Translations under genes and position numbers: made by a program
From: Macrostomum lignano
Lineage: Eukaryota
DNA: 38,005 nucleotides
Assembly (NCBI GenBank): GCA_002269645.1
Contig: NIVC01002713.1
Coordinates: 1-38,005, forward strand
Direction: 5' to 3'
The notes under the pieces: generated by a model
Told to the model about the DNA's origin: nothing
The model's input: only the letters and a program-made list of their open reading frames with translations
The model's database searches: none
Shown here: in pieces, positions 9,972 to 29,538 of the stretch
How the letters are laid out: every line of letters begins with the position of its first letter
Numbering within the stretch: position 1 is the stretch's first letter

Positions 9972-17560
<7,589 letters not shown>

Positions 17561-17802
17561 GCTAGATGCTGGGCCAGGGATCCAACCCGCTTTAATCCTC
17601 GATCAACCTCAGAGGGGACGGCATGGAGGAGCCAAGTCTGATTTATGATGGACTGCAGTACGCCAGCCCAGCTTTCATTGCTTCAACTGTAGCTTAAGTT
17701 TTCACTGGGCGACGGGCCTCATCACTCGTTCCACAGGGCCTTACCAGAGCCTCCTGCTATTGGTTGGGGAAGATAATGAATTTCTGGCTGCCCATCTGCT
17801 GT

Positions 17803-17804
17803 CA

Positions 17805-17884
<80 letters not shown>

Positions 17885-17939
17885 TAGTGTCTGTCTGTCT
17901 TAGTGTCTGCCTGTCTGTCTGTCTGTCTGTCTGTCTGCC

Positions 17940-18024
<85 letters not shown>

Positions 18025-18074
18025 GTCTGTCTGTCTGTCTGTCTCTCTGTCTGTCTGTCTGTCTCTCTGTCTGC

Positions 18075-18979: not shown

Positions 18980-21900
18980 TCAGAAGAAATCGATATCTCT
19001 GGCCGACTGCACAGTGCAGTAGAGCTTCACAGGCACCTGTTTACCGTTGCGTGACAGCAGCGCCTCCTTGGGGGTGTCTTCAACGCAGTCTTTGTCTATG
19101 ATGGCCGCTGTGCCCACGAATTTTTTGGTGAACGAAATTGCCGATTGGCTGTAAACCTGCGGGATCGGATTGGGTTCTGACATTCTGACATTCTGATTCT
19201 CACATTCTGTTGAGATTGGCTAAACCTGACTAACCAGGTGACACTACCCTATCTAACAGGTGACACTACCCTATCTAACAGGTGACACTACCCTATCTAA
19301 CAGGTGACACTATCCTATCTAACAGGTGACACTACCCTATCTAACAAGTGAAACTACCCTATCTAACAGGTGACACTACCGTATCTAACAGGTGACACTA
19401 CCCTATCTAACAGGTGACACTACCCTATCTAACAGGTGACACTACCCTATCTAACAGGTGACACTACCCTATCTAACAGGTGACACTAACCTATCTAACA
19501 GGTGACACTAATCTATCTAATAGGTGGCACTACCATCACTCTACAATATGTACAAAATACCGCAGTCCTCACCTCAATATCTATGGGGTCAAGCAGCTGG
19601 TGTCGATACAGCAGCACTTTGAAGTCCACGTAGAACGTGTCCTTCTCTTTCTTGTCTTCGTACACAAATCCGCTCTGGGCGTTCACCAGGTCTGAGGCTT
19701 CGCAGTCAATCCGGACACTGGCGAGCAGGCCTGTAGGAGTGAATTTTATCATATTCCTTCAGCCCTACTTATTAAGTAGCTAATCATGCGCATAAAGTAT
19801 AAATTTAGGAGAAGTATGAATGACCGAATTCCCAATGATCCAGAAAGGAGCATAGAAAGGGCTAATTATACAATGAATTCACCGAGACCACCTTACCTTG
19901 CGTTCTCAAGTAGGAATTGACGCCTTTCACCTTGGTGACGATGAGGCGAGTAACGCCAAATAAATTCCATTCGCAGCAGGAGCAAGTGCCCGTGGGTTGG
20001 GGCACCAAATCCGGCAGTAGTCTGCGGGTTTCATGGCGCCGATATGTATCGCAGAAAACTTTATCAGGTAAGATTTCCTATCCCGCTCTTTAAACCACTC
20101 TCTGTCCCACTCTTTATCCCACTCTCTATCCCGCTCTTTATTCCACTCTCTATCCCGCTCTTTATCCCACTCCTTATCCCACTCCTTATCCCACTCCTTA
20201 TCCCACTCCTTATCCCACTCCTTATTCCACTCCTTATTCCACTCCTTATCCACTCCTTATTCCACTCCTTATCCCACTCCTTATCCCACTGCTTATTCTA
20301 CTCCCGAACCCACTCCCTATCTAAATCAAATCCCACTCCCTATCCCCATTTCCTATCCCACTCTCTATCCCACTTTTATTATCCATCTGTCTATCCTCAC
20401 GTCATCGAATAGTCGTCCTGGCTGAATGCTCTAAGCGTGAAGTTCTGCTGCTGCCCAGGCTCCTTAGTGCACGGCATCATCAAATAGTTGCCAGGCTCGA
20501 ATCTGGCCTTCATCAGCACGCCCGGCTGCCTCTCCGGCTTGACTCGAAGCGCCAGCCAGGCCTCGCGGGGCGCAGCTTTGATGCGACTTTTCCGATTGAC
20601 TTCAATGCGAAACAGATCCATGCCGATCTCCAGCTGGCTGTCCTCGAAGCAGGCGGTTGACGGGTCGCCCTGTTCCAGGTAGAAGGACACGTTGTTGGGA
20701 TTTTCTCCGGGTATGGTCAGCAGGTACTGCGGATTGGAGGCGTAGGTGTCCTTGTACTCGTAGCTGCCGCCAGCTGAGTAGTCCACGCTGCGCCGCCTGC
20801 CACCGCGGCCGACCTGCTCGGCGGTCCACTCGTTGTGGAAGGTGTAAATTAGCCAAGACCGGATGCTGCCAACGCCGGTGACCACGCAGATGTCGACATC
20901 CGTGAACTGCTTGAGGACGTCACCGATGCTCATCCTGGGAAAAGTTCCAGGCGCGATACAATCGTAGTCATGTTACGTTGACCTTCAGATAATCATTTGA
21001 CCTTAAGGGTTGATTTTCCGACAATAAAATCCTTTGGCTTTGGGTCAGAAACAGTGGACCCGAAATCTCACAAACCCGAAATCTCACAAACCCGAAATCT
21101 CACAAACCCGAAATCTCACAAACCCGAAATCTCACAAACCCGAAATCTCACAAACCCGAAATCTCACAAACCCGAAATCTCACAAACCCGAAATCTCACA
21201 AACTCGAAATATCACAAACCCGAAATATCACAAACCCGAAATCTCACAAACCCGAAATCTCACAAACCCGAAATCTCACAAACCCGAAATATCACAAACC
21301 CGAAATCTCACAAACCTGAAATATCACAAACCCGAAATCTCACAAACCCGAAGTATCACAAACCCGAAATCTCAAAAACCCGAAATCTCACAAACCCGAA
21401 GTATCACAAACCCGAAATCTCACAAACCCGAAATATCACAAACTCGAAATCTCACAAACCCGAAATCTCACAAACTCGAAATCTCACAAGCCCGAAATCT
21501 CACAAACCTGAAATATCACAAACACAAAATCTCACAAACTCGAAATCTCACAAACCCGAAATATCACAAACCCGAAATATCACAAACCCGAAATATCACA
21601 AACCTTAAATATCACAACCCTTTGTGAGCAGTTTTTTTAGTCATTTCGTAGTCAAGCTCACCAGAAAATACCGTCTTTACTGTCCACCAGTCCGATTTTG
21701 TCCTTGAACTCCAGAGTAACGGATCGCCACTCTGGCGAGCTGAAATGAGAGTTTGTTTGGTTGCCAACCAGGATATGTCAGGTGGAACAAGTTGAGAACA
21801 GTTATTTATACCCGTCACTCCAGGCTCCGGTCCACTCCATGTCGAACCAGGCATTCTGGAACATCATTAGCGTCACGGGAGTCTTGCCGTCCTTCAGCTT

Positions 21901-23946
21901 GGTCTGCTGGATGTCTGTGAGGATGTAGCCTCGGCCGTATACGAGACTCTCCTTGGTCCAGTCGCCCATGCGAGTGGTTCGGTTGTCAGGCTGTTTGGGG
22001 GGGGGTCAAAAATTCAATTTCAGAGCGTTTGAGGATAATGACTCAGTCCTTACGGAAATATGATTATGATTATGATTTTGATTTTGATTATGATTCTGAT
22101 TATTATTATGAGTACTCGGAACTTGGCCACAGACTATTTGTTACTGCTAATTGTTCTTGTTACTTGTTTGTTACTGTTAGTAGATAGTAGCGCCAATGGA
22201 GAATAATAATATTTTACGCAGTCCTACCTGCAAGCTGAACAATATCAGAGAGCGCCTGCTTAGATGAGTGTAAAACTGCTTAGCCAGCTGCGCCTGATCA
22301 TCGGGACTGTCTGGATTTATCCCATTCTCAGCGCCTGGCTGTCGCATCTGCCGCAAATCCCAGTGCTCAGGGATGCCCCGAACGAAACTGGCCAGGGCGT
22401 CTACGACGCGGCCTCGACTGAGACTGGCATAGTCTCCGTGCATCCTGTTGCATTGCGGTGTGTTGAGAATATAATGCTCGGAGGTGCTTGAGGTGGCTGC
22501 GGCTGGTAAGGTTTGGGAGGGAGGGGCGGTATGGCGCTAGTGGGGTTTGAGAGGGGGCTGGGGCTAGTGGGGTTTGTGAGGGGTCTGGGGCTAGTGGGGT
22601 TTGAGAGGGGGCTGGGGCTAGTGGGGTTTGTGAGGGGTCTGGGGCTAGTGGGGTTTGTGAGGGGCAGGGGCTAGTGTGGTTTGTGAGGGGCTGGGGCTAG
22701 TGGGTTTGAGAGGGGGCTGGGGCTAGTGGGGTTTGTGAGGGGCTGGGGCTAGTGTGGTTTGTGAGGGGCTGGGGCTAGTGGGTTTGAGAGGGGCTGGGGC
22801 TAGTGGGGTTTGTGAGGGGCTGGGGCTAGTGTGGTTTGTGAGGGGCTGGGGCTAGTGGGGTTGAGGGGGCTGGGGCTAGTGGGGCTTGAGAGGGCTGGGG
22901 CGATTGGGGTGAGAGGGCTATGGCTAGTGTGGTTTTGGGGGGGCTGGGGCTAGTGGGGTGAGGGGTTCTGGGGCTAGTGGGGTGAGGGGGCTGGGGCTAG
23001 TTTTACTTGAGAGGGCGCTGGGGCTAGTGAGGTTTTTAGGGCGTAGAATTTCCAGACAATAAAAAGCAACGCCTGATCATTAAACAAAAACTGACTTAGC
23101 GTAGGCTTTTTCGAGTAGAGCGCTCCAGAACTCGTTCTCCTCGCAGGAATGCGCGTAGACCAGACGGCCTTTCCGCGTCGGCAGCAGGTCGTCAATGACA
23201 ACCTCGTAGAGGCCGCCATGCCTGCTGAACAAGAAGCGAAATATTCCCGGATGAAAATCATCGCCGTAGTCTTGCTGAGTCCAGTTGGGCAGCACGCTGT
23301 TGAGCTGCCCGGGCCTCGAGGTCAGCGCGGCCGAGGCCGTCACGAACCATGCGTTGCCGCGTTCGCCCTGCATCACGTCGGAGCCACTGACGCCGTCAAC
23401 CACCAGGTGTGGATTGCTGACCAGCTCGGTCGGACGGCGCCACTCGATGTCTGAGCCGCGGTTGTTGGCGTCCAGACTGGACGCTTCCGGCGGAAATGTG
23501 GGGTCGACGAACTTGCGCTGCTCGCGGATCAGCTCGCGGTGCAGCCGCTGTTGAGAGAAACGAGCGGTTTTAGCTTTGGCTTTGGGGAGCGAGTGAGGAG
23601 GCAAATGCATTCAGTGAGCCTGTTCTGCTGACTCCTGAGCATGCGCTCACACAGGCCCTGACTTTCTCATTGTTGCAGTCAGTGTACACATTCTGTACAT
23701 TTTAGGGTTGGCCCCCAAACTACTGAGGAATCGAAGCCTAAAGTATATTTGTGAGGGAGTGGACTTTTTTCTTTTATCACAGAATTTTCAAGCTAGCTAT
23801 AACTACCCAAAAGTGCACGCAAGACGCTATCAAGTTACCGCGATCGCACATGATGAAGTCGGCAATCAAGACGGTAAATTATATGTATTACAATAGCTAC
23901 ATCTACTTACCCTGTAATCATGGTCATTGAATCTGATAGTGGCCAT
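18980..23946 (-). CDS. CAPN5: Calpain-5/TRA-3-type calpain (CysPc + C2L/domain III + C-terminal C2), predicted catalytically inactive; complement(join(18980..19156,19573..19730,19897..20021,20401..20934,21662..21739,21812..21990,22228..22444,23096..23547,23911..23946)), 651 aa
   Basis: MATIRFNDHDYR|RLHRELIREQRKFVDPTFPP...MQGERGNAWF...EVVIDDLLPT...NEFWSALLEKAYAK|MHGDYASL...WTGAWSDG|SPEW...DGIFW|MSIGD...NPQYLL...GNYLMMPCTKEPGQQQNFTLRAF...C2-like tail. All nine exons have GT-AG sites with compatible phases; total 1956 nt. The symbol marks the subfamily by architecture; orthology is untested. Confidence 0.88.
19235..19530. repeat. 22-bp minisatellite CCCTATCTAACAGGTGACACTA (calpain intron 8)
   Basis: About 13 copies. 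Confidence 0.95.
20085..20395. repeat. 12-bp minisatellite TTATCCCACTCC (calpain intron 6)
   Basis: Direct reading. Confidence 0.9.
21058..21615. repeat. 16-bp minisatellite CCCGAAATCTCACAAA (calpain intron 5)
   Basis: About 34 copies. Confidence 0.95.
22520..23030. repeat. G-rich ~25-bp minisatellite GGGGCTGGGGCTAGTGGGGTTTGTGA (calpain intron 2)
   Basis: Direct reading. Confidence 0.9.
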
Positions 23947-24874: not shown

Positions 24875-25131
24875 TGTCATGCCGCAGCCCTGCACTCGCT
24901 TGCTTTTGCTAAACGGGGTGCCTAGCAGTGTGGGGTGCTCACGCACTGTACTTAGTTGTGTACACTGTACCCCCGGCTTTCCTCCCCCTTTTTATGCCTG
25001 TTATGCCTACGCGGCCGCACGTGATTGGTCGAGACCTAAAGGCCCAAAAATATATATCGGCGCTCTCGCCCTACTTGGAGGGCCAAGCGTTTTCGCACTG
25101 CAAAATTGAGACTGACTTATGAGTCATTACA
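24875..25131 (+). repeat. 5' LTR
   Basis: Differs from the 3' LTR by two 1-bp homopolymer indels and one A/C substitution; contains CACGTG, ATTGG and an AAAAATATATA box. Confidence 0.95.
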
Positions 25132-25152
25132 TTGGCGTCGCAAGGCCGGACC

Positions 25153-26400
25153 ATAGCCTTTCTACAACTGCCGCCCCCAGGAACATTCAGTCTCAGAGAC
25201 GACCCTCACTCTGTGAGCAAGCGCTGGCAGGACTGGTCCGCCAACCTGCAGCGATACCTGGCGGCAACGGGCATTACTGACGAAGCCCAGAAGCGACAAG
25301 TTCTACTGTACACAGCTGGCAAAGAAGTGAGCGACCTGTACAACGAAATTTCTGCACAGACGCAGCCGACAAACCAGTCCGACCAGGGCACTGCTCAGCA
25401 GCCAACGGTCGACCAGCTCATCCAGCAGTTCAGCAACCACTTCAAAGACCGAGACAACGTAGTTTTCATTCGCTACCAATTCCGACAGTGCCACCAGGAC
25501 GAAGGAAAGCCCATAGACGCCTGGCACAGCCGGCTGTGGGGAGCCTCAGAGGCCTGCCAGTTCGAGGGCCTCCGCCAGTCACTCATCAGGGACCAAATCG
25601 TGGCCAGCTGCCGCAGCGAGTCGCTGAGAAAGAGACTGCTGAACGTGCCGAACATCAGCCTGGCGGACACTCTACAGCTGGCCAGAACGCACGAAGCCGC
25701 AGAGAAGCAGGCAGCCATCATGTCCAACACAGCGGCAATCCCGGAGGAGGTGGCACAGCTTCGACGCCAGCGCCATCCGCCACAAAAGCCACCACGCGAC
25801 CCGCAGTCCACCTCCAAGTGCGTCCGTTGCGGTGAGCTGGGCCACCGAAGCTGCAGCAGAGCCCAAGGCAAGCGGTGCAGCAGCTGCGGCAAAATGAATC
25901 ATCTGGCCAAGGCTTGCCTCAGCGGCCGCTCAAAGATCAACGCACTGCAGCCAGAGCAAGATCAGCCAGCCGACCAGTCGGTGAGCGAAGTGTTCTGCAC
26001 CCTCAGCGCCAAAGATGACGGAGCCAAATTCAGCATCAACATCAACGGACAGCAAATCCGCACCCTTATTGACAGCGGGGCAAGCTGCAACGTTCTGGAC
26101 AAGGCGACGTTCTGCAGAGTCTGCCGCCCTGGCACGCCGCTGACACCGTCCAACACCAGAGTCTTCGCACTCGGCGCCAGCGAACCGCTGGAGGTGGCGG
26201 GCCAGATCAAGCTACCAGTCAGTGCAAACCACCGCGAGTTGGAGGCCACCTTTATCATCATCAACAGCAGCTGCACTCCGATACTCGGCAGAGCGTCCAG
26301 CACCAAACTCGGCATGCTGAGGGTTGGTCCAGAGGTCGGAAAAAATCTGCGATGGTGGCCAGCCTGGCCAAGCCAGCGGACTGCGAGGACCGTCATCTGA
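25153..26400 (+). pseudogene. Gypsy gag + aspartic protease
   Basis: Zn knuckles CVRCGELGHRSC and CSSCGKMNHLAKAC; protease LIDSGAS...ILGR. No ATG at the 5' end; ACC-ATA-GCC at 25150-25158 looks like a mutated start codon. Confidence 0.85.
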
Positions 26401-29155
26401 CCAAGCAACTGCAGCTCCAGAGCATCCTGGCAGGCTTCAGCGACCGCTTCCAAGGCATCGGATGCGTCAAGGGAGTCAGCGTCACCATCAAGCTGAGGCC
26501 AGATGCCAACCCAGTCTGCCAGCCACCGTCCCGCGTACCAGTCCACCTGAGGGCAGCAGTTGTCAAGGAGCTCGAGGACCAACTGGCACAAGGCATCGTC
26601 GAGCGCGTGCACGGCCCAACAGCCTGGTGCTCCAGGATGGTGGCGGTCCCGAAGGCCGAGCAGGGAGAGGTGCGCATCACCCAAGATCTACGCCAGGTCA
26701 ACAAGTACGTGGTCCCGGAAAAACAACCGATCCCGACATTCGAGGAGGTGACTGATGAGATTGCCGGGTCTGAGTACTTCTCAGAGCTTGACGTCGCCAA
26801 AGCCTTCCATCAAATTGAAGTCGCCGAGGAGTCCAGGGACCTGCTGACGTTCTCCACGCCCATCGGCCTCCTGCGACTGCGCCGTCTCTGCATGGGCTAT
26901 ACATCCGCCTCGGAGATCCTGCAGCGGGTGATGACCTCCGTCCTGAGCGGTCTCCCGGGCGTACGCTGGGTGCATGACGACATCCTGGTGTACGCGAAGG
27001 ACATCAAGGAGCACAATCAGCGTCTTCGAGACTGCCTGGCTCGGCTAAAGGAGAGCAACATCACACTGAACGCCAAGAAGTGTCGATTCGCCCAGCGGGA
27101 GGTCGACTTCCTTGCCATGCGCCTCACGGCCGCCGGCATCCACCCGAGCAAGGAGAAGGTGGAGGCCGTCCGCAGCTTCAAGCGGCCAACCAACGTGACC
27201 GAGGTCCGCTCCTTCCTGGGCCTCGTCACCTTCGTGGCCCGCTTCATCAGCAACCTGTCCGACAGAGCTCGGCCGTTGCGGGAGCTGACGAAGCGAGCCG
27301 CCGAGTGGACCTGGGGCGAGCAGCAGGAAGCCGCTTTCAACGACATCAAGCGCACGATCTCCAGCAGCCAGGCGCTGGCGTTCTTCAACAGCGAACTGCA
27401 GACCCAGCTGATCGTCGACGCCAGCCCGACCGGCGTCGGCGCCATCCTGGCCCAGGTGCAGCCTGACGGATCGACACGGCCGGTGGCCTACGCCAGCCGC
27501 AGTCTGAGCCCGACGGAGCAGCGCTACTCCCAGACGGAGCGCGAGGCCCTGGCAGTGAAGTACGGCGGCCTGAAATTCCATCACTACCTCAGCGGCGGCG
27601 GACAGTTCAAGGTCATCATCGACCACAAGCCGCTGATCTCGCTGTTCAGCCCGGGATCTCGTCCACCGCCAAGGATCGAGCGAATGGCACTGCGGCTGCA
27701 AGACCTCGTGTTCCAGGTGGTGTACCAGCCCGGCGCCAACAACCCGTCCGACGTTTTGAGCCGCCAGCCGCTGCCGATGCCGCCCAACAACGTTGGTGAG
27801 CAAGAAGACGCCATCTACGTGGCCACGGCAGTCCAAGCGGCAACGCCGGTGTCCATCAGCCTGGCGACCATCAAAGCGGCCTCCGACCAAGATGCCACAG
27901 TCCAAGCTGCGCTCCATGGCATCCGCGGTCATCGCTGGGACAAGAGCGACCCGAACCGGAGAAGGCTGCACGGCGTCGCCCACGAGTTGTCCGAGCTCGA
28001 CGGCCTGCTGCTGCGTCAAGGCCAGATCTTCATGCCAACAGCACTGCGCTACCGATGCCTGCAGCTGGCGCATCAAGGCCACCAGGGCATCAGAAAGACG
28101 CTGGATCGCCTTCAAGCCAAGGTCTGGTGGCCCAGCATGCGAGCATCAGTCGAGTCTCACGTGGCGGCCTGCCTGAGCTGCCAGATCTGCACCGCGAGAC
28201 CACGCCGAAGGGGACGCCGCTCAAGCCGACCGAACTACCGGCGGCGCCCTGGCTGGAGCTCGGCATGGACTTCCTCGGGCCCGTCAACGGTAAGTCGCTG
28301 CTCGTCTGCACGGACCACTTCTCGCGCTTCCCACTGGTCGAGGTCATGTCTAGCACCACCGCCGCCGCAGTCATTCGCGTGCTGCGGAATTGGTTCAGCA
28401 TCTTCGGGCAGCCGATGAAAGTGACGACCGACAACGGCCCGCCCTTCGCGTCGGCCGAGTTCAGCAGCTTCCTGGCGGACCAAGGCGCCAGGCACCATCG
28501 AATCACTCCGCTGTACCCACAGGCCAACGGCGCTACGGAAAGGTGCAACCAGGGACTCAACAAGGCCATCCGTGCGGCCGTGGCCGAAGGCAGGGACTGG
28601 ACGGCAGCGATCGACGAGTACCTGGCCGCGTACAGACACACTCCGCACAGCGCTACTGGGATCGCGCCCGCCAGCCTCCTGTTCGGGCGGCAGATCACCG
28701 ACACGATTCCCAACCTCCAGCACTCGCAGCCGGTGGACGTGACGAGAGCAGCCATCAAGGACAAGGACCAGCAGTCCAAGGAGAAGATGAAGCACTACGC
28801 CGACTAAAGGGCCAAGGCAGCAGACCACGACATTCGGCCAGGAGACCGCGTCCTGCGACGGCTGCAGTCCAGACAAAAGGCCGACGCCTTCTACGAGTCA
28901 ACGCCGTGGGTCGTGTCCGAAGTGCTCGGCGACTCGCTGGTCATGCAGCGCGACGACACCACCTGCCGCAGGCACGCCACGCAGGTCAAGCGGCTGCCAG
29001 AACCACCAGACCAGCCAGCCGGGCCGGCGCCGCAGCCGCCTGGCATCCCAGGCAGCTCGGACGAGGTGGAGTCGCCGATCGCGGCTCGGCCGCACCCGCG
29101 CCAGGCCAAAGACGGAGACAAGAACTATAAAGAAGCTGATTTGCGCATGCGCTAA
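26352..29155 (+). pseudogene. Gypsy pol: reverse transcriptase, RNase H, integrase (frameshift at ~28195; in-frame TAA at 28805-28807)
   Basis: RT: ELDVAKAFHQI, VHDDILVY; RNase H: IVDASPTG, YSQTEREALAV, DHKPL; integrase: AHQGHQG...CLSC, MDFLGP, TDNGPPF, NGATERCN; after the stop the same frame continues RAKAADHDIRPGDRVL...RRHATQVKR (GPY/F-like tail). Confidence 0.92.
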
Positions 29156-29281
29156 CTGACTGTTTGATTTTCTTGCGAACTTTCGTGCGCGCTTCGCTAT
29201 TTATTTCTGGCAATCATGTTGCCTCCAATATTCCTTTTTTTAGTCCAAATCCCAATTATTTTTATTCCACTCGGGGAGAAT

Positions 29282-29538
29282 TGTCATGCCGCAGCCCTGC
29301 ACTCGCTTGCTTTTGCTAAACGGGGTGCCTAGCAGTGTGGGTGCTCACGCACTGTACTTAGTTTGTGTACACTGTACCCCCGGCTTTCCTCCCCCTTTTT
29401 ATGCCTGTTATGCCTACGCGGCCGCACGTGATTGGTCGAGACCTAAAGGCCCAAAAATATATATCGGCGCTCTCGCCCTACTTGGAGGGCCAAGCGTTTT
29501 CGCACTGCAAAATTGAGACTGACTTCTGAGTCATTACA
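29282..29538 (+). repeat. 3' LTR
   Basis: Near-identical to the 5' LTR. Confidence 0.95.

What the first reader, a model, noticed from the sequence alone, without database searches (positions are those of the whole stretch)
18980..23946. Intact calpain-5-type gene with a dismantled catalytic triad (pseudo-protease)
All nine exons splice in frame to a 651-aa protein. The nucleophile position reads QGERGNAWF (GCA at 23350-23352) where CAPN5 has GNCWF, and the His position reads SLVYGRGY (CGA at 21931-21933) where CAPN5 has GLVKGHAY. The oxyanion Gln and the Asn (QNAW) are kept. Each change needs at least two nucleotide substitutions, so these are not read errors. An intact frame with no catalysis implies a retained scaffold or regulatory role. 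Non-proteolytic calpains are known (eutherian CAPN6, Drosophila CalpC), but this would be a separate loss in the TRA-3/CAPN5 type.
Basis: partly seen in the sequence, partly recalled or inferred. Interest (0 to 1): 0.72.

Follow-up and report, generated by a model that had tools for sequence, protein, structure and literature searches.

The report
Catalytically dead calpain-5-type gene, flatworm
This is an intact, transcribed and selectively maintained flatworm (Macrostomum lignano) gene for a calpain-5-type protein that has lost the cysteine and histidine needed to cut proteins. It is a real 'pseudo-protease', but of a kind already known, and probably one case among many in a wider invertebrate gene group.

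Summary
Nine GT-AG exons on the minus strand (23946..18980) give a 651-aa protein identical to GenBank PAA55743.1 (Macrostomum lignano BOX15_Mlig011844g1, 'hypothetical protein'). The window is that gene's whole contig.

- **Active site.** Aligned to solved calpain-1 and CAPN5 cores, Cys is Ala78 (GCA 23350-23352) and His is Arg255 (CGA 21931-21933). The oxyanion Gln72, Asn281 and the Trp283 'wedge' are kept.
- **Fold.** AlphaFold gives a confident calpain core, a C2-like domain and a C-terminal beta-sandwich.
- **Not an error or pseudogene.** Three genomic copies share the changes. dN/dS against the copy Mlig012140g1 is 0.09 (27 synonymous, 9 non-synonymous differences).
- **The loss is old.** A 38%-identical paralog (Mlig010786) also has Ala and Arg, and is also constrained (dN/dS 0.19).
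- **Wider group.** 35 mollusc, annelid, brachiopod and nemertean 'calpain-5-like' proteins ('Tra-B') mostly lack the Cys too; only 5 keep it. Likelihood placement and shared derived residues put the flatworm genes there. Distance trees do not.

It is a new member of a known kind, like eutherian CAPN6 and Drosophila CalpC. Its function is inferred to be non-catalytic binding or scaffolding.

The parts
18980..23946 (-). Whole gene (ATG to stop) for the 651-aa Tra/CAPN5-type pseudo-calpain BOX15_Mlig011844g1. It has nine exons and eight introns.
   Evidence: The translation is identical to PAA55743.1.
23911..23946 (-). Exon 1 (codons 1-12). It is followed by a phase-0 intron found only in the two M. 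lignano paralogs.
23096..23547 (-). Exon 2, the first protease-core subdomain (PC1). It holds Gln72 (23368-23370) and Ala78 in place of the nucleophile Cys (23350-23352).
22228..22444 (-). Exon 3, the end of PC1 and the linker.
21812..21990 (-). Exon 4, the second protease-core subdomain (PC2). It holds Gly244 (21964-21966), Arg255 in place of the catalytic His (21931-21933), Asn281 (21853-21855) and Trp283.
21662..21739 (-). Exon 5. It holds Ile319 (21667-21669) in place of the Glu that binds Ca2+ at core site 2 in calpain-1.
20401..20934 (-). Exon 6, the end of the protease core and the C2-like (CBSW / Calpain_III) domain.
   Evidence: PF01067, residues 369-491, E 7.8e-14
19897..20021 (-). 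Exon 7, the linker and the start of the C-terminal beta-sandwich.
19573..19730 (-). Exon 8, the degenerate C2 domain. The loop-1 'DPY' motif of Tra C2 domains is replaced.
18980..19156 (-). Exon 9, the end of the degenerate C2 domain and the stop codon.

Best explanation
The locus is a functional gene of the flatworm Macrostomum lignano. It encodes a TRA-3/CAPN5-type calpain homologue (protease core, C2-like domain, C-terminal C2-type sandwich) that cannot act as a cysteine protease, because the nucleophile Cys is Ala and the general-base His is Arg.

Shown:
- The protein keeps the calpain fold and 91 of 115 positions that are near-invariant in canonical relatives.
- It is transcribed and spliced as read.
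- It has stayed under purifying selection since the catalytic residues were lost.
- Parsimony places the loss before the split from a 38%-identical paralog that carries the same two replacements, so the loss is old.

Inferred:
- It works by binding rather than cutting, as a scaffold, a regulator or a non-cleaving binder of calpain substrates or partners.
- Its calcium response is probably altered. Core Ca2+ site 1 ligands are kept. One acidic ligand of site 2 is lost. The acidic loops of the C2 domain are lost.
- The best-studied analogue, eutherian CAPN6, stabilises microtubules and modulates Rac1 without proteolysis. A cytoskeletal role of that type is the leading guess, at about one chance in three.
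- Most likely (about 65%) the gene is a fast-evolving member of a lophotrochozoan paralog group, here called 'Tra-B', in which the catalytic Cys has been replaced repeatedly.
For: - **Gene model and identity:**
- **Domains:** Peptidase_C2 at E 2.5e-78 and Calpain_III at E 7.8e-14.
- **Active-site alignment** to calpain-1 and CAPN5 structures. All about 155 canonical Tra-type proteins fetched have C/H/N at these columns.
- **Structure:** AlphaFold mean pLDDT 90.4 and pTM 0.88. Foldseek hits m-calpain at E 5e-42 and the CAPN5 core at TM 0.89, rmsd 2.2 A.
- **Three genomic copies** share the replacements: g1 (the window), g2 and Mlig012140g1. So do older gene models from another assembly.
- **Selection:** dN/dS is 0.093 against Mlig012140g1 (Sd 27, Nd 9, binomial p 3.5e-11). 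Non-coding identity is only about 90%.
- **Paralog Mlig010786:** it has the same Ala and Arg, seven shared intron positions and dN/dS 0.19.
- **Transcript evidence:** the public annotation derives from RNA-seq assemblies (PMC5730564).
- **Tra-B group:** 35 sequences, with T13 S9 C5 A3 G2 V2 R1 at the nucleophile position. NJ bootstrap for the group is 100%.
- **Likelihood placement:** the eight best placements are in the group or on its stem. RELL support is 0.90, or 0.83 without active-site columns. Both halves of the protein agree.
- **Shared losses:** all five positions that Tra-B has lost are also lost in both flatworm proteins.
- **CAPN6 precedent:** PMC3731218 and PMC13413365.
Against: - No enzyme assay exists, so inactivity is inferred from sequence.
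- Expression level and tissue are unknown. Transcript support is indirect, through the annotation method.
- dN/dS comes from recent within-genome copies with few differences (36 and 26) and a simple counting method.
- Membership of Tra-B is not settled. Best Tra-B versus best non-Tra-B placement differs by 13 lnL units, with z of about 0.9. NJ bootstrap for Tra-B plus the flatworm pair is only 4-17%.
- Two of the shared residues sit next to the dead His and could be convergent.
- The C-terminal domain is not recognised as C2 by Pfam.
- The cytoskeletal role is an analogy only.
Confidence: 0.8

Rival explanations
1. The protein has the same non-catalytic nature, but the loss arose privately in the flatworm lineage from a canonical CAPN5/TRA-3 gene. 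It is unrelated to the lophotrochozoan Tra-B group, and the shared residues are convergent.
For: NJ trees place the pair as a long branch at the base of the Tra clade. NJ bootstrap for Tra-B plus the pair is 4-17%. Only 2 of 17 strict Tra-B diagnostic columns are shared. The likelihood preference is not significant (z 0.9). No other flatworm member was found.
Against: The basal NJ position is what long-branch attraction would produce. Under likelihood with gamma rates every placement outside Tra-B is at least 13 lnL units worse, and the basal ones more than 20. The core and the C-terminal half each prefer Tra-B on their own. Five of the five Tra-B-specific losses are shared, including two in the C2-like domain far from the active site.
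Confidence: 0.3
2. The locus is a decaying pseudogene or a redundant duplicate drifting neutrally, with no function.
For: The catalytic residues are gone. The genome is neopolyploid with much redundancy. The gene sits among tandem repeats and next to a retroelement.
Against: The 651-codon frame is intact across nine exons with canonical splice sites in all three copies. dN/dS is 0.09 while introns have diverged by about 10%. A 38%-identical paralog is also intact and constrained. 91 of 115 near-invariant fold positions are kept.
Confidence: 0.02
3. The protein is still a protease and uses non-canonical residues.
For: The fold, the oxyanion Gln72, Asn281, the Trp283 wedge and most Ca2+ ligands are kept. 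Non-canonical arrangements have been proposed for some algal calpain-like proteins (PMC13413365).
Against: There is no nucleophile at or next to position 78 (GNAWF) and no base at 255. Replacing the catalytic Cys with Ser blocks Aplysia calpain autolysis (PMC5650170), and Cys-to-Ser/Ala is the standard inactivating mutation for calpain crystallography (PMC7001764). The paralog has also lost Gln, Asn and Trp.
Confidence: 0.03
4. The dead triad is an artefact of assembly, sequencing or gene modelling.
For: Nothing specific supports this. The assembly is from long reads of a repeat-rich polyploid genome.
Against: The same codons occur in three separate contigs of the assembly and in gene models from an independent earlier assembly. 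No alternative exon carrying a catalytic motif exists in the window.
Confidence: 0.01

Closest known systems
Eutherian calpain-6 (CAPN6)
   Same: It has the Tra-type architecture (protease core, C2-like domain, C2, no penta-EF-hand). The nucleophile Cys is naturally replaced, it is maintained by selection, and it acts without proteolysis, stabilising microtubules and regulating Rac1/GEF-H1 (PMC3731218; PMC13413365).
   Different: It is not an orthologue. CAPN6 is a vertebrate duplicate, and bird, reptile, fish and monotreme CAPN6 sequences fetched here all keep C/H/N. Marsupial CAPN6 also retains the triad according to PMC3731218. CAPN6 has Lys at the Cys position. The flatworm protein has Ala, also lacks the His, and has a degenerate C2 domain.
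Human CAPN5 and C. elegans TRA-3 (active Tra-type calpains)
   Same: These are the best structural and sequence match for the core (6p3q, TM 0.89, 35% identity). The domain order is the same. Seven of the eight introns lie at Tra-gene positions.
   Different: CAPN5 has Cys81, His252 and an active core (PMC7001764). Here the equivalents are Ala78 and Arg255. One core Ca2+ ligand equivalent is lost, and Pfam does not recognise the C2 domain.
Lophotrochozoan 'calpain-5-like' paralog group (Tra-B, defined here; possibly one of the two Aplysia Tra calpains of PMC5650170)
   Same: Loss of the catalytic Cys is the rule (30 of 35) and loss of His is common (17 of 35), while Asn is kept. Shared residues are Gly for the conserved Glu before the His motif, Gly after the His, and loss of a conserved Cys and Phe in the C2-like domain. 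Likelihood placement falls inside this group.
   Different: The flatworm proteins are far more divergent, at 30-36% identity against 50-59% within the group. They lack the Pfam-detectable C2 domain that Pfam records for 29 of 35 members. Distance trees do not join them to the group.
Drosophila CalpC and other non-proteolytic calpains (trypanosomatid, schistosome, nematode)
   Same: These are calpain-fold proteins with substituted triad residues that are retained in genomes (PMC5650170; PMC3731218).
   Different: CalpC belongs to the classical (penta-EF-hand) calpains, a different subfamily. The schistosome cases cited in the literature were not examined here.

Membership tests
Calpain superfamily (Peptidase C2 / CysPc fold) | The CysPc protease-core domain is detectable by profile and by fold. 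| tested here: met
   PF00648 at E 2.5e-78 over residues 25-337. Foldseek hits calpain cores with TM 0.85-0.89.
Calpain superfamily (as an enzyme) | A Cys-His-Asn catalytic triad. | tested here: not met
   The triad positions read Ala78, Arg255 and Asn281. The protein is a homologue, not a working cysteine protease.
TRA-3/CAPN5/CAPN6 (Tra) subfamily | A C2-like (CBSW / domain III) domain follows the core, and there is no penta-EF-hand. | tested here: met
   PF01067 at E 7.8e-14 over residues 369-491, with no EF-hand hit.
TRA-3/CAPN5/CAPN6 (Tra) subfamily | A C-terminal C2 domain. | tested here: inconclusive
   Pfam C2 is not found even at E<=10. A profile-profile match to Tra C2 regions gives probability 91% and E 1.3e-7. 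The model shows a confident beta-sandwich at 521-645, and Foldseek finds C2 domains. The conserved acidic loop residues are replaced.
TRA-3/CAPN5/CAPN6 (Tra) subfamily | The closest relatives and the gene structure are Tra-type. | tested here: met
   Nearly all non-self hits are calpain-5/6-like; the one named exception is P0005, a fused classical-calpain model. Seven of the eight introns lie at the positions and phases of the Owenia Tra genes.
CAPN6 orthologue | The protein groups with vertebrate CAPN6. | tested here: not met
   No tree or placement joins it to vertebrates; the stem of the deuterostome clade containing them is more than 19 lnL units worse in the first placement. In the larger set every placement outside Tra-B is at least 13 lnL units worse.
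Non-proteolytic calpain (functional class) | The nucleophile is replaced and the gene is kept under purifying selection. | tested here: met
   Ala78 is in place of the Cys. dN/dS is 0.093 for this gene and 0.19 for the paralog.
Non-proteolytic calpain (functional class) | Protease activity is absent and there is a non-catalytic role such as microtubule binding. | not testable with these tools
   This needs recombinant protein assays and in vivo work.
Lophotrochozoan Tra-B paralog group (defined here) | Group-specific derived states: Glu to Gly at 244, Ala to Gly at 256, and loss of Cys378, Phe478 and Cys78. | tested here: met
   All five are shared by both flatworm paralogs.
Lophotrochozoan Tra-B paralog group (defined here) | Phylogenetic placement inside the group or on its stem. 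| tested here: inconclusive
   ML placement gives LWR 1.0 and RELL 0.90 (0.83 without active-site columns), but z is 0.9. NJ bootstrap is 4-17%.

The most novel reading that the evidence does not exclude
The flatworm genes are the most derived members of an old paralog lineage of CAPN5-type calpains. This lineage arose before the split of molluscs, annelids, brachiopods, nemerteans and flatworms. Across it the calpain fold has been kept for a non-catalytic job, while the nucleophile was replaced again and again. Seven different residues occupy that position, and the full triad survives in only 4 of 35 sampled sequences. That would make it a phylum-spanning pseudo-calpain family, older and broader than eutherian CAPN6, and I found no description of it in the papers searched.
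Probability: 0.5. Interest if true: 0.5.

Novelty: new member of a known kind. Interest (0 to 1): 0.35.

Why it matters
Dead-enzyme homologues show which parts of a fold matter apart from catalysis. Here a calpain has had no nucleophile and no base for a long time, yet it is held under purifying selection in two paralog lineages. M. lignano has RNAi, in situ methods and stable transgenesis, so the non-proteolytic function of a Tra-type calpain could be studied genetically outside mammals. The by-product may matter more. A whole lophotrochozoan 'calpain-5-like' group, annotated in databases as if it were CAPN5, mostly lacks the catalytic Cys. That affects automatic annotation and any inference of calpain activity in molluscs and annelids.

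Tried and rejected
- **Wasted search.** My single exhaustive representative search was handed only the last exon (58 aa) by mistake. It returned the protein itself and two weak repeat proteins. It says only that this exon alone has no detectable relatives.
- **dN/dS against the g2 copy.** This was impossible, because the two CDS differ by one nucleotide.
- **Distance (NJ) trees.** The pair falls at the base of the clade. I read this as long-branch attraction, because it is more than 13-20 lnL units worse under likelihood. The conflict stands.
- **Strict diagnostic-column count.** Only 2 of 17 Tra-B columns are shared, no better than for arthropods or nematodes. The later test on positions that Tra-B has lost was more telling.
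- **Intron positions as markers.** The Owenia Tra-A and Tra-B genes have identical introns, so this test has no power.
- **Calpain-arrestin synteny between the two paralog loci.** Both have an arrestin-domain gene downstream, but the two show no detectable similarity. This was not used.
- **Profile search with the Tra-B alignment.** It added only one member. Searching with P0007 found the rest.
- **Literature.** There are no hits for the gene identifiers. Of the six papers that mention both calpain and Macrostomum, none names either in its title or abstract, and I did not open them.
- **Not testable here.** I could not check whether M. lignano also has a canonical Tra-A gene, and I could not identify the organism behind P0007 (run SRR24204647).
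Full report
**What is in the window.** Nine exons on the minus strand between 23946 and 18980 splice in frame through GT-AG introns. They give a 1956-nt CDS and a 651-aa protein. Pfam finds the calpain protease core (Peptidase_C2, residues 25-337, E 2.5e-78) and the calpain C2-like domain (Calpain_III, residues 369-491, E 7.8e-14). The translation is identical to GenBank PAA55743.1. [quoted passage not shown] The window is therefore a whole contig of assembly GCA_002269645.1. That annotation was built from genome-guided RNA-seq transcript assemblies (StringTie/TACO). Low-expression novel transcripts were discarded (PMC5730564).

**The active site.** HMMER alignments to solved calpain-1 and to the human CAPN5 core (6p3q) place Ala78 (GNAWF) under the nucleophile Cys. 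They place Arg255 (YGRGY) under the catalytic His. Gln72 (oxyanion hole), Asn281 and Trp283 are kept. Trp283 is the 'wedge' Trp286 of CAPN5 (PMC7001764). Among 166 full-length Tra-type proteins fetched in the first two searches, every canonical one has C/H/N at these columns. An AlphaFold model built on 68 relatives is confident (pLDDT 90.4, pTM 0.88). It matches m-calpain (E 5e-42) and the CAPN5 core (TM 0.89, rmsd 2.2 A). The fold is intact and the chemistry is gone.

**Not an error, and no hidden exon.**
- A second copy (g2, contig NIVC01000583.1) differs from the window by one nucleotide in the CDS.
- A third copy (Mlig012140g1, contig NIVC01000001.1) differs by 36 substitutions and a 9-nt indel. 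It keeps GNAWF, YGRGY and QNAW.
- Older gene models from another assembly show the same motifs.
- A six-frame scan of the whole window finds no alternative exon with a Cys- or His-bearing catalytic motif.

**Selection.** Between the window CDS and Mlig012140g1 there are 27 synonymous and 9 non-synonymous differences. This gives dS 0.064, dN 0.006 and dN/dS 0.093, with binomial p 3.5e-11 against neutrality. Introns and flanks of the same two loci are only about 90% identical.

**The loss is old.** M. lignano has a second lineage, Mlig010786 (three copies, 640 aa), only 38% identical to this protein. It reads GASAWF and YGRGY, the same Ala and Arg. It has also lost the oxyanion Gln, the Asn and the Trp. 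The two genes share seven intron positions and phases, including one intron found in neither Owenia gene. Copies of that paralog give dN/dS 0.19 (p 9e-5). Parsimony places the loss of Cys and His before the two lineages split, and both have been maintained since.

**A wider group.** In the first alignment several spiralian 'calpain-5-like' proteins also lacked the Cys. A search seeded with the closest of them (P0007) brought the set to 35 sequences. They come from bivalves, gastropods, a chiton, annelids, a brachiopod and nemerteans.
- At the nucleophile column they read T13, S9, C5, A3, G2, V2 and R1.
- At the His column they read H18, Q8, Y2, K2 and single R, L, V, F and N.
- Asn is almost always kept.
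- The full triad survives only in Owenia, Liolophura, Lineus and Mactra.
- Several of these species also yielded a canonical copy with C/H/N.

I call the two groups Tra-A (canonical) and Tra-B. Tra-B is monophyletic in 100% of NJ bootstraps. Hastings et al. recorded two Tra calpains in Aplysia without comment on their catalytic residues (PMC5650170). I found no description of this pattern.

**Do the flatworm genes belong to Tra-B?** NJ trees put them on a long branch at the base of the Tra clade. NJ bootstrap for Tra-B plus the pair is 4% with Kimura distances and 17% with gamma distances. I then wrote a likelihood placement, using a Gonnet-derived rate matrix and four gamma categories, with the backbone branch lengths optimised first.
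- **39 taxa:** the five best placements are in Tra-B or on its stem. The best alternative is 15 lnL units worse and basal placements are more than 20 worse.
- **51 taxa:** the eight best placements are all Tra-B and the likelihood weight there is 1.0. RELL support is 0.90, or 0.83 after dropping 33 columns around the active site.
- **Two halves:** the core and the C-terminal half each prefer Tra-B on their own.
- **Significance:** best Tra-B versus best non-Tra-B differs by 13 lnL units with z 0.9, which is not significant.

A separate test gives the same direction. Of 115 positions at least 93% invariant in canonical Tra proteins, Tra-B as a group has lost five (Cys78, Glu244, Ala256, Cys378, Phe478). 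Both flatworm proteins have lost all five, with the same Gly at 244 and 256. I put membership at about 65%.

**Other functional sites.** I use calpain-1 numbering from the alignment. The ligand identities come from my own knowledge of Moldoveanu et al. 2002.
- Core Ca2+ site 1 equivalents are kept (Val62, Gly64, Asp69, Glu151).
- At site 2, Glu287, Asp294 and Asp317 are kept.
- The Glu333 equivalent is Ile319, and Val in the paralog. Every other sequence examined has Glu or Asp there.
- The C-terminal 152 residues give no Pfam C2 hit even at E<=10.
- The same residues match the C2 region of Tra calpains profile-to-profile (probability 91%, E 1.3e-7). They fold as a confident beta-sandwich.
- The conserved 'DPY' loop and a conserved loop Asp are replaced.

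**How it most likely works.** Shown: the gene encodes a calpain-fold protein without nucleophile or base, and selection maintains it. Inferred: it acts by binding. Candidate roles are a scaffold or regulator, or a non-cleaving binder of calpain substrates or partners. Its calcium response is probably weakened or changed, and the Ca2+/lipid function of the C2 domain is probably lost. The nearest studied analogue is eutherian CAPN6, which stabilises microtubules through its C2-like domain and modulates Rac1 through GEF-H1 (PMC3731218; PMC13413365). A similar cytoskeletal role is my leading guess, and nothing here tests it.

**Comparison and novelty.** Non-proteolytic calpains are well known. Examples are eutherian CAPN6, Drosophila CalpC, trypanosomatid calpain-like proteins and some schistosome, insect and nematode calpains. 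This gene is a new member of that kind in the Tra subfamily. It is not an orthologue of CAPN6. It is already in public databases as an unnamed protein. The less expected result is the breadth of Tra-B.

**Limits.**
- No assay was done and there are no direct expression data.
- The dN/dS values rest on few differences between recent copies.
- The tree question is open.
- The one exhaustive search was wasted by my own input error.
- All three homologue searches are used, so I could not look for a canonical Tra gene or further flatworm relatives.

Noticed in passing
window 24956-29538 (+): A Ty3/gypsy-type LTR retroelement lies about 1 kb upstream of the calpain start codon. Its 176-nt LTRs (24956-25131 and 29363-29538) are 99% identical. 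Its ORFs carry zinc-knuckle/aspartyl-protease, RT, RNase H and integrase domains, and the reading frame changes inside the integrase. It is present upstream of the g2 copy but absent (empty site) at the Mlig012140 copy, so it inserted after those copies diverged.
   Followed up: partly
window 19230-19534, 20077-20379, 21058-21617, 22532-23035: Four of the eight calpain introns are largely filled by unrelated minisatellites with units of 22, 12/24, 16 and 26 nt. Array length differs between gene copies. Intron 2 is 651 nt here, 1200 nt in g2 and 810 nt in Mlig012140g1.
   Followed up: partly
window 9972-10943 (-); L002 18219-22051: An ORF with an Arrestin_C domain lies downstream of the calpain gene. 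The paralogous calpain locus also has an arrestin gene downstream. The two show no detectable similarity by tblastn, so the shared neighbourhood may be chance.
   Followed up: partly
window 10967-11231, 12691-13364, 14918-16074, 17795-18073: There are very long microsatellites: (ACTA)66, (GACA)169 and (TCTG)70. A 10-nt array of about 115 copies produces a GC skew near 0.7.
   Followed up: no
proteins P0007-P0198 (not in the window): Public 'calpain-5-like' or 'Calpain-5' annotations of 35 mollusc, annelid, brachiopod and nemertean proteins hide a paralog group in which only 5 keep the catalytic Cys and only 4 the full triad. These names overstate the likely enzymatic function.
   Followed up: yes
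L008 10001-24480 (Owenia fusiformis): The Owenia Tra-B gene (triad intact) has the same 11 intron positions as the Owenia canonical Tra gene. The look-up tool lists this one gene as several overlapping pieces, which at first looked like a tandem duplicate.
   Followed up: yes
protein P0005 (Prochilodus magdalenae, 974 aa): This is a fish protein made of two classical calpain units in tandem, probably two neighbouring genes fused in one gene model. Its first half was used only as an outgroup.
   Followed up: no
window 23920-23922 (codon 9): The only coding difference between this copy (g1) and the g2 copy is His9 (CAT) against Gln9. The more distant Mlig012140 copy also has Gln, so His9 is the derived state of this copy.
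   Followed up: yes
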